Source: Ostrea edulis (taxonomy: Eukaryota). Taken from it: 64,000 bases of DNA. Shown piece by piece: positions 19,473 through 63,388 of the stretch; position 1 is the stretch's first letter; each line of letters starts with the position of its first letter. Made by a program: the position numbers and the translations under genes. Where the stretch lies: positions 78,368,001 to 78,432,000 of the forward strand of contig NC_079170.1 in the NCBI RefSeq assembly GCF_947568905.1, in the 5' to 3' direction. The notes beneath the pieces were generated by a model. It saw only the letters and a list, made by a program, of their open reading frames with translations. It ran no database searches and had not been told where the DNA came from.

Positions 19473-22400
19473 ATGGATATTTTCTGGTCAGCACTTACAT
19501 ATGTAATTCTTGTCGTTCGTGAAGCAAACCCAGTATTTCATGAAGATCATAACATTACGCACCAGGGAAGCGATTTTGGTTTCAACTATACACATGTATT
19601 ATTCCAAACCATTCTTCTTTGTGGGACAGATTTAATCTGTAACAAGTCTTTGCTGAATGTATTCGACATCCCAATCCAGTCAGTATCAGCTAAAGCACGA
19701 TGTGGGAACTGTTCCTGCGATTGCTTCAACTTCACCCCCGCAATCAATTGCTGCCCCGATATCATCTTTCAACATGGGCTTCTGGAATGCAAGGATGTAC
19801 AAATTTTGTCCAAAACAATTGACAGAAAAGAAGTTGTTGCCTCCTGCCCAGTCGGAACAAGCCCGGAATTATCACAGGAATGCACAATGAAACGATCTAC
19901 TATTGACGTAGTGCTTCAACCTCCAACAACCAGTGATTTGACACATATTTCATACCTGAATAAAAATTGTGGTGCATGTAATAAGGCAACCAACTTGAAA
20001 GAATGGAATATCATGTTCGGATGCTCAAAAGAAGTAGATTTCAATTATCTATCATCCTATCAAGAAATAGTAGATCTGGCAACTGTGCAAGCATGTGATA
20101 TTAGATTTAGTCCTCCCAATTCCTTGCAAAATTGTTCGATGCATATCCGTGAAAAAATCTCATTTTGCAATGTGACAGGGTCATGGCAGAATTATGATGT
20201 GCAAATAGAAAAAGCATGCCTTAGCTCCTACGTCGTTGCAATAGGCATGTTCAAAAACATTTTTTGTGCCATGTGCAATCCACCAGAATTTAAAGAGGGA
20301 TTCCTGATTGACGAATGCGACAATTCTACCAGCATATACAGTGAAGCATGTCGGTTTCTGCCGTTTCAGGAAGCATCGTTTCCATACAAGAACTACTTTT
20401 GTTTTATTTGCAACCATGGTGACAACAATACATTGCACTATAAAGATGTTGATCTCGTTGAATCACCATTTGAGTCATACGTAAAAGAAGGAGAATACCC
20501 ATATCAGTTTAAGTTTACAATTGCTTATAATGTCGATGATGTTAACCAGTACATGAGCAGACTCTTAAAAACATCGAATCTAAATGAAACGGTTTCCAAG
20601 CCTTCAACGGCAAAAAATACATATAAAAGGGAAAACCAATTTCAATGTTCAAAAACATTTGAATTTGGCGATCTAGGGGGACAAATATTTTCAACACACT
20701 TTAACCCAACTCCGCCCGAAGATACATCTACCTCAGATGCGAATACTTTATCCTCGATTAATATAACTAATTTAATCCGAATGAGTTTCGCTTTTTCGAG
20801 ACATGGTACCTGTACACCAGGATTATTGCCAAACTACACCATTCCTCTGCAGAAACAATGCTCCTGTACTGTAGGATGTAGGTCAGATTGTTGTGACGAT
20901 TTTGCCTTAAAAGTTCCGTGGACTTGTATTGATGATCGTTACCATAGAGATGGGAATAAGAAAGATTTTTTGGCGATTGGTGGATGTATGGAAGATGAAA
21001 ATATGGAACATCTGTGCAGCAGTGAGAAGACCCATCATTTTTATCAGGCATTACCGGTTACCTCAAAACACGGATATAAAGAAAATTACGTTAATTTCTT
21101 TTGTTATTTGTGCAACAGAAAGACAATTGACAGAAATTATCCCAATGTCACTGAAAATATTACAAAGGAAATCGAAATTTGGCCTTTGGTTGTATTTTGT
21201 ACTGTATACGTGAATCACAGGAACTTTCATTCACTCCAAAGTCTGATTGAATATGTAAACCAGAGCTCATGTGTACTGGAATTTTCACCACCTGCTAATT
21301 CTTCTAGATGTAGCGAAAACTGCAACGAAGGCCTGACTGAAATAGTCGAAAAATGTAACAAATCTAAAACTTGGTCCAATTTAAATGAAGAAATCCTATA
21401 TGCATGTGAGAATTCTGATTCATTTAGATTTCCCCGAATCAAGCTGGATAACACCATCTACAAAAATAAATTCTGTACAATTTGTAATCCTTTCAAAGGA
21501 AATATAGCAGATAGTTACTGCAGCGATTTCTCTCTACATTCGAATGTTAATCAAGCGTGTAAAGAATTTCCGAGCATAAACGTTTGCCATCCATACAAAA
21601 ATGTCTTTTGTGAAATGTGTCATAATGGTGGCATTGAATCGTATTGTTATGAAGAATTAGAAGCTAACGGAGGTTTAACAGATATTCCGGGTCCCACTCT
21701 ACCACCTTCTCCTTATGTTGGAACTTTCAGATCAACTTTCACCTTTTCAGCGTATGACACTTACGACACTGGTATTGACAAGTCAAACATAAAATGCCAG
21801 CAATACCAAATCTTTGATGATTATCAGGTAGGTACATGTAGCTCATATACATATTGCGTGATGATTCAATGACTGCTCAAATGTTATAATTGAAAAATGC
21901 TCCAAAATATAATCAGAACAAGGGTTGTCCAAATATAATACCAATAACAAAGGTAATCATAGTAAAGACTTAAAATGTAACCCGAATATAGATTGTCCAG
22001 ATTTGATCATGATAAAGAGTGCCCAATGCAAGCATAACAAAGACTGCAACTGAATTAACATATAAAGGGTGCCCAAATGCAATCATAGTAAAAGCTTCTG
22101 AAATGTTATAAGAAAGGACGGAAAAAAATTTCGAACGTAAAATGACAAGTGTTACTTCTCCTTTAATTCCTGTTTGATATTAAAAGATTTAACACCATTC
22201 TGAAGTCAATTTCTGTTTGATATTAAAAGATTTAACACCATTCTGAAGTCAATTTCTGATGAAGAAGCGGAGTTATTTAAAAACGTGAATTTAGCATCTC
22301 TTATCATATTTTTAAAAAATATGATTACACTAGTATAAACACACAGGAAAAGGTTACAGTGTTTAATGAAATCATTATACATGCATAAAAGATTGTTTTA

Positions 22401-22796
22401 CAAGACATTATATAGACTGATTATATGCTACACAAGCATAGCTTACAAATAAACTTCATAGGCACCAGTTGCACGACTACAGATGACATAGTGTGTTAGT
22501 TTTGGAATGGCAAGTATAGGTCTCGCTATTATCTACACTGTTTCATAACTAGTCTCATTACTCTAAACATATAATTTTTGTATATATCACAAATAAAACA
22601 GGTGGTTATGTTTACAATCGAATAGTTGCTAGTGGATGAAATGTAAATATAAAGCATTCTCGAGTGCAAGTAAACTGTCCTTTGATTCACTACAGAAAAT
22701 CAGAACGAATACTCTCGATGTCTTTGATAGAACATATCTAACGCTTTGATTTCAATGTTTACCATTATGATGAAAATTTTAATTTTGTTTTCACTT

Positions 22797-22827
<31 letters not shown>

Positions 22828-61300: not shown

Positions 61301-61356
<56 letters not shown>

Positions 61357-63388
61357 CTAAAATATAAAAAGTATCATTAGTTTGTTGACTTTGGAAAAAT
61401 TTAGTGTGTGAAACATATTGCGAACTTTTGATTGGGCTCGATATTCGAGTTAGGTATTTCCGTTAAAAAAAAAAAAAAACAAGCGATAAAGCTCAAAAGT
61501 AATGAAAATCAAGTTCATTTGAGTGTTTATTACCGCATCATTTCACTGGAAAACATTGACCTTTATTGACGAGCGGGCGCGCCGACGCACCGAATACAAC
61601 TAGCCAAAGAACACTCACGGCTATGACACTTAGCGATAATCATAGGTCAAAATTTGTGATACTTAACCTGCAGCTAATGATTTCTGAACATGAATAATAT
61701 TTCTCGGAGGGAAGTAAAACTAACAAACAGAACCCTCCAAAAGCTAGTTATTGTTCTACTTCACTAAAACCTTTCTTCTCCTTTCTTTGTAGCAAACGTG
61801 CTGGAATTTGACATGCTTTCCTGGCAAGCTACTTCAAAATGAAACCTGTGTCTCACTGTTGCCAATGACATCAAATTTACGGTATACGCTTGCCGTAAAG
61901 ATTAAGTTGTCTACTTTTATTATGATTAATGCAACCGTCCAAGAGTCTATGGAAGGAATGAAAGAATACGTAACGACAAAAATGAAACAACTACTCCGTA
62001 CCGATTTTTTCATAGAAGATATCACATTAATGAGCTCAGTAAGCTGTGATGACATGTTTTTTAATGTTAGTGAGGTGTATTTGTACTTAGTGATTTTCAT
62101 TGATAAGAATGTTTATCGTGATCAATTGGAGCAGAAATTGATTGACTTCACAGAATCGTCTTTTATCTGGAATCTGTCAAATAATTCAGCGTTGATTGGA
62201 AATACCATCGAGTTAAACATACAGATTTCCAGAATTGTACAGCCTGTTTTGAAGTCCACCCTCATGTCGAATTTAAAGAGGACGAACCACTGTTTTGTTG
62301 CAAATGTCGAAGAAGACTACCTGGCTTCCATGTTTGCAAATGTGATTGTGAGCCCCTTATTAACTTGTCCACAAGTTCTTCTAAAAGAAAACGAAACTGA
62401 ACTCGATTGGGAAAACACCCTAACAGAAAATACTTTCTTGAGTTTGGCGCCGTCCTTTCATCACACTTCAGATAATGATGGAATTCGAGTATGTGCTGGG
62501 AGCATATCCTATATCAAGGAACTAAAATCAAAAGAATTAGATGACAACTTTTCATCTCTGACAATCGTTACTTTGATTTGCATTATCGTTTCTTTGCTTT
62601 GCTTGATTCTAACCCTGATAACGTATTGCATGTTTCCCAGTCTGAGGACCCTTCCAGGAATTAACAATATGTTTTTGGTAGCATCTCTCTTTTTGGCACA
62701 ATTCCTTATGATTGTCAGACCCTATTTCCATTCATCATCTCTGGTTGCAGCCTCTGTTCTTTCGCATTTTTCTTGGCTGTCAACGTTTCTATGGTTACAG
62801 GTCTGTTCTTTTCATATGTTTCGTGTCTTCAATGCCAAAGGTCGATCAAAATTTCTGGGAGGGAAAGGGAGAAAGCTGATAGTCCAATACGTTTTGTATG
62901 CTTTTGGTGTTTCTCTTTTTATTGTTACCTCTAACGTTTCTATTTCATTGATAGTTACTAATGGTGAAAACACAGGATACGACAAAATGTCAACTTTAAT
63001 GACATACAAAATTGCATTTATTACAACTCTCGTAACCCCCATAGCTTTTGTTTCTGTGACAAATATCATATTTTATACCTTCACTGCATATAACATTTAT
63101 TCTTCACCAAAAATTGAAAACACAACCGGAAATAGGATTCACTTCGGCGTGTATGTGAAGTTGTTTACCCTGACTGGTTTGTCCTGGGTTTTACAAATGG
63201 TGGACATGTTTTTGGAGTTGTCAGCTTTCTCGTATTTTGTTGCCATTCTCAACGGCTTGCAAGGCCTGTTTATCTTTGTCAGTTATGTTTGTAACAGACG
63301 GGTATGGAAGCTGTATGTGACATCATGTTGTACAGGTACAGTGTACAAGTTTGTCTCTAGTTCTAAAACAGACACTACCACTATATAA
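55645..63388 (+). CDS. Receptor 4: near-identical paralog of receptor 3, 1333 aa. Coding exons 55645-58050 and 61793-63388
   Basis: Both exons intact; donor GAG|GTAAAC at 58051 and acceptor AG at 61791-61792, phase 0. Confidence 0.86.
58157..58493 (+). mobile_element. Meta-SINE-like copy (paralog of 46235-46570)
   Basis: gaccgccgcggtggtctagagttagatcgttcgccccgcatg..gtcacgggtgttcggtgatgacc. Confidence 0.8.
58521..59339. mobile_element. Solo LTR (819 bp), present only in copy B
   Basis: TGTCGCA...TGTGACA termini; 5-bp TSD AACAT at 58516-58520 and 59340-59344; the paralogous site near 46590 is empty (catgtcaaacataagttg). Confidence 0.8.
61304..61354. repeat. (TA)n microsatellite, longer than in copy A (~48460-48474)
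   Basis: Long tatata run. Confidence 0.95.

What the first reader, a model, noticed from the sequence alone, without database searches (positions are those of the whole stretch)
19473..63388. Tandem array of four large orphan 7TM receptors with an unusual architecture (top candidate system)
Four intact head-to-tail paralogs share one layout: signal peptide, two Cys-rich modules, a Pro/Thr-rich variable segment, a ~250-aa alpha/beta domain and a class B-like 7TM. They lack the GPS motif and the extracellular disulfide typical of that class. The ectodomains diverge widely between receptors 1, 2 and 3/4 while the Cys framework is fixed, with signs of recent duplication and gene conversion. This is the pattern of a diversifying ligand-sensing (immune or chemosensory) receptor family. 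I cannot name a characterised ortholog; the function is inference.
Basis: partly seen in the sequence, partly recalled or inferred. Interest (0 to 1): 0.85.

Follow-up and report, generated by a model that had tools for sequence, protein, structure and literature searches.

The report
Oyster cluster of GAIN-less class-B receptors
This flat-oyster locus holds four intact neighbouring genes (a fifth lies just outside the window) for large cell-surface receptors of an uncharacterised but widespread invertebrate family, which joins cysteine-rich outer modules of no known fold to an adhesion/Methuselah-like seven-helix core without the usual self-cleaving domain.

Summary
Four intact two-exon genes on the + strand encode 1319-1341-aa receptors: signal peptide, two DUF8401 (PF28443) Cys-rich modules, a Pro-rich linker, a ~235-aa alpha/beta juxtamembrane domain and a 7tm_2 core. 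The core is closest to adhesion GPCRs among solved structures. No GPS/GAIN signal was found. Both cysteines of the TM3-ECL2 disulfide are missing.

The window is Ostrea edulis chromosome OX387710.1. A fifth, inverted, R1-like copy lies 4-9 kb past the window end. R3/R4 come from a ~12.5-kb segmental duplication (dS 0.03). A ~175-bp tract is homogenised among R1-R4. One intron-skipping contig supports splicing.

The architecture is not unique to this locus. DUF8401 + 7tm_2 proteins occur in bivalves (406 clusters at E<=1e-30), gastropods, annelids, arthropods and a coral, under automatic names such as Mth-like or ADGRE-like. I found no characterised member and no paper on the family.

The parts
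19473..21827 (+). R1 exon 1: signal peptide, DUF8401 module 1, linker, DUF8401 module 2, Pro-rich linker (785 aa)
   Evidence: tblastn to P0002; ORF, ATG and GT donor
22831..24435 (+). R1 exon 2: Cys hairpin, alpha/beta juxtamembrane domain, 7tm_2, tail ending T-K-I (534 aa + stop). It is 100% identical to the public O. edulis model P0172, an N-terminally truncated model of 605 aa.
33892..36297 (+). R2 exon 1 (802 aa ectodomain)
   Evidence: the public gene model here has a 1336-aa product with DUF8401 + 7tm_2
36793..38373 (+). R2 exon 2 (526 aa + stop): juxtamembrane domain + 7tm_2
43670..46096 (+). R3 exon 1 (809 aa): module 1 at 43769-44674, inter-module linker at 44675-44971, module 2 at 44972-45904, Pro-rich linker at 45905-46096
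   Evidence: AlphaFold2 model of module 1, pLDDT 88.8, pTM 0.86
46097..48894 (+). R3 intron (2798 bp, GT..AG). It contains high-copy repeats and is skipped in one contig of run X1.
   Evidence: record 3 joins 45742-46093 to 48893-49037
48895..50493 (+). R3 exon 2 (532 aa + stop): hairpin + alpha/beta domain at 48895-49602, 7TM at 49603-50397, tail with a class I PDZ-type end (T-T-I) at 50398-50490
55645..58050 (+). R4 exon 1 (802 aa)
   Evidence: the public model has a 1333-aa product with DUF8401 + 7tm_2
61793..63388 (+). R4 exon 2 (531 aa + stop)
38303..50886 (+). Segmental duplication unit A: the last ~70 bp of R2, the intergenic region and R3
   Evidence: Self-BLAST shows 88-95% identity to 51336-63790, introns and intergenic DNA included
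51336..63790 (+). Segmental duplication unit B: a relic copy of the R2 3' end at 51336-51406, the intergenic region and R4
44984..45157 (+). Homogenised tract at the start of module 2 (N-I-T-N-L-I-R ... C-C-D-D-F-A-L). The same tract lies at 20760-20933 in R1, 35209-35382 in R2 and 56959-57132 in R4.
   Evidence: In the 60-codon windows covering the tract, pS is 0.24-0.42 against 0.62-0.67 gene-wide. The printed nucleotide alignment is visibly near-identical among R1, R2 and R3; the percentage was not computed. The permutation test gives R1-R3 p 0.0005, for a concordant run at codons 502-510 just 3' of the tract.

Best explanation
The locus is a tandem cluster in Ostrea edulis of at least five genes, four of them in the window. 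They encode non-cleaving class-B GPCRs of the DUF8401 + 7tm_2 family. This is an old invertebrate family that databases label Mth-like, ADGRE-like or latrophilin-like, and it is strongly expanded in bivalves.

Shown:
- The gene models are intact, and splicing of an R3-type gene is supported.
- The ectodomain is two paralogous DUF8401 disulfide-rich modules with 20-24 N-glycosylation sequons.
- A compact alpha/beta domain sits where adhesion GPCRs have the GAIN domain.
- The 7TM core is closest to adhesion GPCR cores among solved structures, and it keeps the TM6 (G-L-S-W) and TM7 (N-G-L-Q-G-x-F) motifs.
- The tail ends in a class I PDZ-type motif.

Inferred mechanism:
- The DUF8401 modules bind an unknown extracellular protein or matrix ligand.
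- The signal passes through the rigid juxtamembrane domain to the 7TM. The last strand of that domain carries an invariant Cys just before TM1, so it is probably disulfide-fixed rather than releasable.
- There is no autoproteolysis and no Stachel-type tethered agonist.
- The receptor couples to a G protein and is held in place by PDZ scaffolds.

The cluster grew by old tandem duplications (R1, R2, R3), an inverted duplication (R5 from R1) and a recent 12.5-kb segmental duplication (R4 from R3), with local gene conversion.
For: - Gene models and intactness.
- Species and public models.
- Splicing: where the contig X1 record 3 bridges the R3 intron with 349 + 145 nt. The public R1 model and the Saccostrea models use the same junction.
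- 7tm_2.
- DUF8401: precomputed PF28443 on homologues and on the window's own R2/R4 products; atlas names.
- No GPS/GAIN/HRM/Methuselah_N. The juxtamembrane profile finds nothing in PDB.
- Alpha/beta secondary structure at pLDDT mostly above 85.
- Purifying selection in all folded domains.
- PDZ-type C-terminus in R1-R5 and in 16 of 34 kin.
- Family size and spread.
- Duplication and conversion.
Against: - No ligand, coupling or tissue data exist.
- Run X1 is RNA only by the tool's guess, and it comes from a close relative (about 96% identity), not from the reference individual.
A very divergent GAIN or some other known fold is therefore not formally excluded.
- The class-B TM3 'E-G' motif is replaced by C-S across the family (read by eye), and the oyster clade lacks the TM3-ECL2 disulfide. 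Signalling could therefore be atypical or lost.
- The disulfide pairing of the last strand is inferred from Cys conservation, not from coordinates.
Confidence: 0.6

Rival explanations
1. Diversifying immune or chemosensory receptor family. Tandem paralogues evolve under positive selection on the ectodomain to track variable ligands such as microbes or waterborne cues.
For: - Lineage-specific expansion in bivalves: 406 representative clusters at E<=1e-30, with the ten top hits whose sources were looked up all bivalve.
- Tandem and segmental duplication.
- R3 and R4 differ most in the Pro-rich linker: 19 non-synonymous against 3 synonymous changes, plus two indels.
- The overall R3/R4 omega of 0.55 is higher than for the old pairs.
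Against: - Pairwise dN/dS is 0.22-0.28 in both DUF8401 modules and 0.13-0.18 in the 7TM for R1/R2/R3.
- The only omega above 1 is in a low-complexity linker, not in a folded binding module.
- The most conserved stretch of the whole protein lies in the ectodomain, at the start of module 2.
- No expression or challenge data are available.
Confidence: 0.2
2. True adhesion GPCRs whose GAIN domain has diverged beyond sequence recognition. They would still be activated by exposure of a tethered agonist just before TM1.
For: - The 7TM is closest to adhesion GPCR cores in PDB.
- A ~235-aa domain sits exactly where GAIN sits.
- GAIN domains are known for low sequence conservation (abstract of PMC11697300, seen).
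Against: - No GPS Pfam hit in the four genes or in the 49 aligned family members, even at E up to 10. The profile search of PDB finds no GAIN.
- The predicted secondary structure is strand-helix-strand-strand-helix-strand twice, with 12-20-residue helices. It is not a helical subdomain followed by a 13-strand sandwich.
- No H-L-T/S or T-x-F-A-V-L-M-like sequence precedes TM1, and an invariant Cys sits in the last strand.
Confidence: 0.08
3. Orthologue-like relatives of the ancient Methuselah-like receptors (the Mthl1/Mthl5/Mthl14/Mthl15 type). They would act as receptors for a secreted protein that controls tissue morphogenesis, rather than as environmental sensors.
For: - Protein-language-model features of the 7TM are nearest arthropod clusters named Mth 5 or carrying Methuselah_N (scores 0.92-0.97).
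- Arthropod DUF8401 + 7tm_2 kin are named GPRmth5 or Mth2 by their sources.
- PMC4768249 reports a Mth/Mthl expansion in Crassostrea gigas, SMB domains on non-arthropod members, and 51 members with unrecognised ectodomains.
Against: - No bona fide Drosophila Mth/Mthl sequence was available, so no 7TM tree was made.
- The names are automatic.
- There is no Methuselah_N hit.
- The functional analogy is from memory and untested.
Confidence: 0.3
4. Signalling-dead adhesion or scaffold proteins. The 7TM would serve only as a membrane anchor after loss of the conserved disulfide and of the TM3 acidic residue.
For: - Paired loss of the TM3 and ECL2 cysteines in the oyster clade.
- The family-wide C-S in place of the class-B E-G in TM3 (read by eye).
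Against: - The 7TM is the most constrained part of the protein (omega 0.13-0.18, 66-69% identity).
- The TM6 and TM7 microswitch motifs and helix 8 are kept.
- Both Cys were lost together, with no protein keeping just one (43 both, 6 neither, 0 single). That pattern fits a tolerated structural change better than decay.
Confidence: 0.08

Closest known systems
Adhesion GPCRs (class B2; ADGRL3, ADGRG2, ADGRE1, ADGRD1)
   Same: - Long multi-module ectodomain.
- TM6 G-x-x-W and TM7 N-x-L-Q-G motifs.
- PDZ-type C-terminus, as in several adhesion GPCRs (this last point is from general knowledge).
   Different: - No GPS motif, no recognisable GAIN domain and no Stachel-like sequence.
- An alpha/beta domain sits in the GAIN position.
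- The ectodomain modules (DUF8401) are found in no vertebrate adhesion GPCR hit in the searches here.
- The oyster clade lacks the TM3-ECL2 disulfide.
Methuselah / Methuselah-like receptors (PMC4768249)
   Same: - Class-B 7TM without GAIN.
- Cys-rich ectodomain.
- Lineage-specific tandem expansions, including one reported in Crassostrea gigas.
- SMB domains reported on non-arthropod members.
- Automatic names and language-model features point to this family.
   Different: - No Methuselah_N domain.
- Membership by 7TM phylogeny was not tested here.
- The ectodomain is about 1000 aa, against about 200 aa in Drosophila Mth (that size is from memory).
Pfam PF28443 (DUF8401) proteins, with or without Somatomedin_B
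   Same: - The window's R2 and R4 products, and all close homologues, carry PF28443.
- Atlas clusters combine DUF8401 with 7tm_2 and sometimes SMB in Mollusca, Annelida and Arthropoda.
- Each module starts with a C-x-C-x3-C-x5-6-C-C-x-D pattern that is reminiscent of SMB.
   Different: - These genes have two modules in tandem, whereas many kin have one.
- No SMB Pfam hit at E<=0.1.
- The family has no described function, and no paper mentions it.
SEA-domain juxtamembrane modules (mucins, ADGRF1/F5, ADGRG6)
   Same: - The predicted order strand-helix-strand-strand-helix-strand occurs twice, directly outside the membrane.
- The best named language-model neighbour of the 240-aa domain is an SEA-domain cluster. 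This is weak: score 0.78.
   Different: - No SEA Pfam hit.
- No G-S-V-V-V-type cleavage motif.
- The fold comparison was not done on the domain alone, so this is a lead only.

Membership tests
Adhesion GPCR (class B2) | 7tm_2 seven-helix core most similar to adhesion GPCR cores | tested here: met
   [not shown]
Adhesion GPCR (class B2) | GPS motif (C-x-C ... H-L/I-T/S) just before TM1 | tested here: not met
   No PF01825 hit in R1-R4 at E<=0.1, in nine kin, or in 49 juxtamembrane segments at E<=10. Precomputed Pfam lists on homologues show only PF00002 and PF28443. The sequence before TM1 has no such motif.
Adhesion GPCR (class B2) | GAIN fold (helical subdomain A plus 13-strand subdomain B) | tested here: inconclusive
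   The predicted secondary structure is alpha/beta, and the profile search of PDB finds no GAIN.
Secretin-like receptors (class B1) | N-terminal hormone receptor domain (HRM) | tested here: not met
   No HRM hit. Secretin-class structures rank below the adhesion ones.
Methuselah/Mthl | 7TM groups with Drosophila Mth/Mthl in a phylogeny | not tested
   No authentic Mth/Mthl sequence could be fetched. The only leads are automatic names and language-model neighbours.
Methuselah/Mthl | Methuselah_N ectodomain (PF06652) | tested here: not met
   No hit. According to PMC4768249 this domain is arthropod-specific and is not required for family membership.
DUF8401 (PF28443) | Match to the PF28443 profile | tested here: met
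   Precomputed PF28443 hits on the window's own R4 (unmarked) and R2 (weak) products, and on all 22 homologues of exon 1. The local Pfam copy lacks this model, so the HMM was not run directly.
Somatomedin B domain | PF01033 match | tested here: not met
   No hit at E<=0.1. There is only a motif resemblance, plus co-occurrence of SMB with DUF8401 in related clusters.
SEA domain | Ferredoxin-like beta-alpha-beta-beta-alpha-beta fold next to the membrane | tested here: inconclusive
   The order of secondary-structure elements fits, and there is a weak atlas lead at 0.78. There is no Pfam hit and no structural superposition.

The most novel reading that the evidence does not exclude
DUF8401 is a new disulfide-rich fold, and DUF8401 + conserved Cys stalk + 7tm_2 is the ancestral ectodomain architecture of the Methuselah-like branch of class-B GPCRs, dating back to the cnidarian-bilaterian ancestor. 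In molluscs an added SEA-like alpha/beta module takes the place of the GAIN domain. That would give a class-B receptor activated without autoproteolysis or a tethered agonist, possibly by force or by ligand-driven re-packing of a disulfide-fixed stalk. The oyster clade would then have re-engineered the extracellular face further by a paired loss of the otherwise near-universal TM3-ECL2 disulfide.
Probability: 0.2. Interest if true: 0.7.

Novelty: new variant of a known kind. Interest (0 to 1): 0.45.

Why it matters
Class-B2 receptors are defined by the GAIN domain and activated by its tethered agonist. A large, constrained and probably expressed family with an adhesion-like core but no GPS signal raises the question of how such a core is switched on by other means.

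The family is catalogued only as a DUF and under misleading automatic names. Its ectodomain module is predicted confidently yet matches no solved fold. It is one of the bigger receptor expansions in bivalves, where environmental and pathogen sensing is of practical interest. It could also supply the missing ectodomain definition for the non-arthropod Methuselah-like receptors that PMC4768249 left unassigned.

The clean 43/0/6 co-loss of the two cysteines is a natural experiment on how dispensable the conserved GPCR disulfide is.

Tried and rejected
- **Local Pfam on the four ectodomain exons:** no hit, because the local copy lacks PF28443.
- **Foldseek and VIA-align of the exon-2 model against PDB and the atlas:** the lists were filled by 7TM matches, so the fold of the juxtamembrane domain stayed unresolved.
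- **Juxtamembrane profile against PDB and Pfam:** only chance-level hits.
- **RNA evidence:** no run is on record as RNA. Only one guessed-RNA run, from a relative, gave a spliced contig. Contigs cannot give expression level or transcript ends.
- **Longest-concordant-run permutation test for conversion:** significant only for R1-R3 (p 0.0005), and its run lies just 3' of the tract. R1-R2 gave p 0.058 and R2-R3 was not significant.
- **Search for a Drosophila Mthl relative using a shrimp family member:** it returned only crustacean, insect, tick, scorpion and coral DUF8401 proteins with automatic names.
- **Literature searches:** nothing for DUF8401, and nothing specific for oyster adhesion/Mth receptors, SEA or GAIN-less receptors, or O. 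edulis.
- **Intergenic ORFs:** 32062-32616, 40206-40568, 4605-5126 and 24860-25399 have no Pfam hit and lie in tandem or dispersed repeats.

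
Full report
**What is there.** The window is AT-rich animal DNA (GC 0.29-0.40). Eight long + strand ORFs come in four pairs. tblastn of a 1321-aa Saccostrea echinata protein (P0002) gives two collinear blocks per pair. Each pair is joined by a phase-0 GT-AG intron whose acceptor follows a polypyrimidine tract. The spliced products have no stops:

| Gene | Exon 1 | Exon 2 | Product |
|---|---|---|---|
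| R1 | 19473-21827 | 22831-24435 | 1319 aa |
| R2 | 33892-36297 | 36793-38373 | 1328 aa |
| R3 | 43670-46096 | 48895-50493 | 1341 aa |
| R4 | 55645-58050 | 61793-63388 | 1333 aa |

The finding's coordinates are exact.

**Whose genome, and what is already annotated.**
- R1 exon 2 is 100% identical to the Ostrea edulis protein named 'adhesion G protein-coupled receptor E3-like' (P0172, 605 aa). That model starts at an internal Met 71 residues before the same exon junction.
- The contig is OX387710.1 of GCA_947568905.1, and window position 1 corresponds to record position 78368001.
- Public models exist for R2 (1336 aa) and R4 (1333 aa) and carry DUF8401 + 7tm_2.
- A fifth copy, R5, is R1-like (82-88% aa identity) and has two intact exons. 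It lies on the minus strand 4.3-9 kb beyond the window end, tail-to-tail with R4. Its public model ('Mth-like', 434 aa) is truncated.

**Architecture.**
- The N-termini are hydrophobic, as expected for signal peptides.
- Exon 1 holds two paralogous ~300-aa Cys-rich modules (BLASTP E 1e-19). Each has three N-x-F-C-x-x-C motifs. There are 52-54 Cys and 20-24 N-glycosylation sequons per protein.
- The local Pfam copy finds nothing in exon 1. However, all 22 homologues and the window's own R2/R4 products carry PF28443, which the atlas names DUF8401.
- Exon 2 was modelled on 49 sequences (pLDDT 85.4). It starts with a Cys hairpin. A ~210-aa alpha/beta region follows, whose elements run strand-helix-strand-strand-helix-strand twice. 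Then come seven helices and helix 8.

**The seven-helix core.**
- 7tm_2 scores E 1e-10 to 1e-12.
- Every PDB sequence hit is an adhesion GPCR. ADGRL3 scores 8.6e-14 with R3 alone and 8.6e-35 with the family profile.
- The alignment to ADGRL3 shows the TM6 G-L-x-W and TM7 N-x-L-Q-G-x-F-I-F motifs kept. The TM3 E-G is C-S across the family.
- No Methuselah 7TM turned up among the PDB hits, so these searches cannot separate adhesion-type from Mth-type cores.
- Language-model features place the core nearest arthropod clusters named Mth 5 or carrying Methuselah_N (scores 0.92-0.97).

**What is missing.**
- *GPS/GAIN.* No GPS, GAIN, HRM, SEA, SMB or Methuselah_N Pfam hit appears in the four genes, and none appears in nine kin with other lengths. 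None of GPS, GAIN, HRM, SEA or SMB appears in 49 juxtamembrane segments at E up to 10. A profile of that domain finds nothing credible in PDB. The sequence before TM1 has no H-L-T or T-x-F-A-V-L-M-like motif. Instead it carries an invariant Cys in the last strand.
- *Limit of the GAIN test.* I could not fold this domain alone, and the whole-model searches were saturated by the 7TM. The GAIN fold is therefore 'not seen' rather than excluded. An SEA-like reading rests only on element order and a weak atlas lead at 0.78.
- *The TM3-ECL2 disulfide.* Of 49 aligned family members, 43 have both cysteines, 6 have neither, and none has just one. R4 was not in that alignment but shows the same residues as R3 in the four-gene alignment. 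On a maximum-likelihood tree the Cys-less proteins fall in one oyster clade (SH-aLRT 94). Its sister, from Pinctada, keeps both. Three rows in that clade were not labelled; P0005 lacks both by eye.

**Family range.**
- An exhaustive search with R3 exon 2 finds 3243 representative clusters at E<=0.001 and 406 at E<=1e-30.
- The ten top hits whose sources were looked up are all bivalve: Saccostrea, Argopecten, Pinctada, Ylistrum, Sinanodonta, Mya and Mytilus. All are uncharacterised.
- Members have one or two DUF8401 modules.
- Profile and follow-up searches add Biomphalaria, Patella, shrimps, crabs, crayfish, an orthopteran, thrips, a tick, a scorpion and the coral Oculina. All carry DUF8401 + 7tm_2 and none carries GPS. 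Their automatic names include Mth2, GPRmth5, ADGRE4P and ADGRG2.
- The full juxtamembrane domain is recognisable in gastropods (E 1e-18 to 1e-25). In insects and a tick only its last ~60 residues, the Cys-bearing stalk, are recognisable. The alpha/beta part may therefore be a molluscan addition.
- PMC4768249 described Mth/Mthl as an ancient family with a Crassostrea expansion. It reported SMB domains on cnidarian and deuterostome members, and 51 members with unrecognised ectodomains. This family plausibly belongs there, but I could not make the tree.
- No paper mentions DUF8401.

**Evolution of the cluster.**
- R3 and R4 are 96% identical (dS 0.034, omega 0.55). They lie in a ~12.5-kb tandem segmental duplication, 38303-50886 against 51336-63790, at 88-95% identity across introns and spacers.
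- Unit B begins with a relic of the last 23 codons of R2.
- R3 and R4 differ most in the Pro-rich linker: two indels, and 19 non-synonymous against 3 synonymous changes.
- R1, R2 and R3 are 52-54% identical with saturated dS (1.3-1.7).
- For the R1/R2/R3 pairs, omega by domain is as follows:

| Domain | omega |
|---|---|
| DUF8401 modules | 0.22-0.28 |
| Juxtamembrane domain | 0.17-0.24 |
| 7TM | 0.13-0.18 |
| Inter-module linker | 0.6-0.7 |

- This is purifying selection. A diversifying pattern is not supported at this resolution.
- A ~175-bp tract at the start of module 2 is visibly near-identical at the nucleotide level among R1, R2 and R3, synonymous sites included. In the 60-codon windows covering it, pS is 0.24-0.42 against 0.62-0.67 gene-wide. 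In a permutation test the longest concordant run of variable sites was significant for R1-R3 (p 0.0005). That run lies at codons 502-510, just 3' of the tract, so it supports conversion in this region rather than the tract's exact limits. This fits gene conversion. A nucleotide-level constraint is the alternative.

**Expression.**
- No run is on record as RNA.
- In run X1 (guessed RNA; a relative at about 96% identity) a 497-nt contig joins 45742-46093 to 48893-49037. That is the predicted R3 junction, with 349 and 145 nt on either side.
- X1 has almost no depth over the unique parts of the intron, whereas DNA runs X3 and X7 cover it.
- Together with the identical junction in public models, splicing is supported. 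Level, tissue and transcript ends are unknown.

**Verdict.** The architecture is not a local oddity. It belongs to a large, old, Pfam-catalogued but unstudied invertebrate receptor family.

The most likely mechanism is a non-cleaving class-B GPCR. Its DUF8401 modules would bind an extracellular partner, and a rigid juxtamembrane domain would transmit to a constrained 7TM held by PDZ scaffolds. The C-terminal S/T-x-hydrophobic motif is present in R1-R5 and in 16 of 34 kin. An immune or chemosensory role is possible but has no evidence here.

Noticed in passing
L002:6543-11305 (equivalent to window positions 68273-73032, minus strand, beyond the window end): A fifth intact paralogue, R5, is 82% (exon 1) and 88% (exon 2) identical to R1. 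It lies tail-to-tail with R4, so the cluster includes an inverted duplication and is larger than the window shows.
   Followed up: partly
window 21615-24435 (R1) and L002:10001-11305 (R5): The public O. edulis gene models for R1 (605 aa, 'ADGRE3-like') and R5 (434 aa, 'Mth-like') are N-terminally truncated and lack the DUF8401 ectodomain. The R2 and R4 models are full length. Paralogues in one cluster carry different automatic names.
   Followed up: partly
window 9782-11053 (+): A single-exon 423-aa ORF has two B-box zinc fingers (E 1e-16) and a weak LDL-receptor class B / NHL-like beta-propeller tail. It is a RING-less TRIM-like gene upstream of R1.
   Followed up: no
window 51336-51406: A relic copy of the last 23 codons plus stop of R2 lies downstream of R3, differing from the original at only a few positions. 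It marks the left edge of the R3-to-R4 duplication unit.
   Followed up: partly
window 46097-46219 and 58051-58158: Directly after the exon-1 donor of R3 and R4 the reading frame stays open through a His-rich (CAT/CAC) microsatellite. If the intron were retained, this would give a His-tailed, soluble ectodomain.
   Followed up: no
window 46237-46809, 47192-47382, 47574-47955 (R3 intron): These are very high-copy repeats (summed contig depth 1e4-2e6 in DNA runs), with opposite-strand and go-back joints. They are probably transposon or satellite families nested in the intron.
   Followed up: no
window 45905-45990 vs 57880-57945: In the Pro-rich linker between module 2 and the exon junction, R3 and R4 differ by 12-nt and 9-nt indels and clustered substitutions, although the flanks are about 98% identical.
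   Followed up: partly
window 1356-1867, 3234-3840, 4608-5268, 24942-25413, 30269-30460, 31448-32035: Six minisatellite arrays with periods of 23-96 bp. The ORFs called over 4605-5126 and 24860-25399 are repeat artefacts with no Pfam hit.
   Followed up: partly
window 13361-14004 vs 32207-32841 (inverted), plus 41852-42062, 53721-53944 and 54400-54764: Copies of a dispersed repeat (76-88% identity) are scattered between the receptor genes. They are possible substrates for the rearrangements that built the cluster.
   Followed up: no
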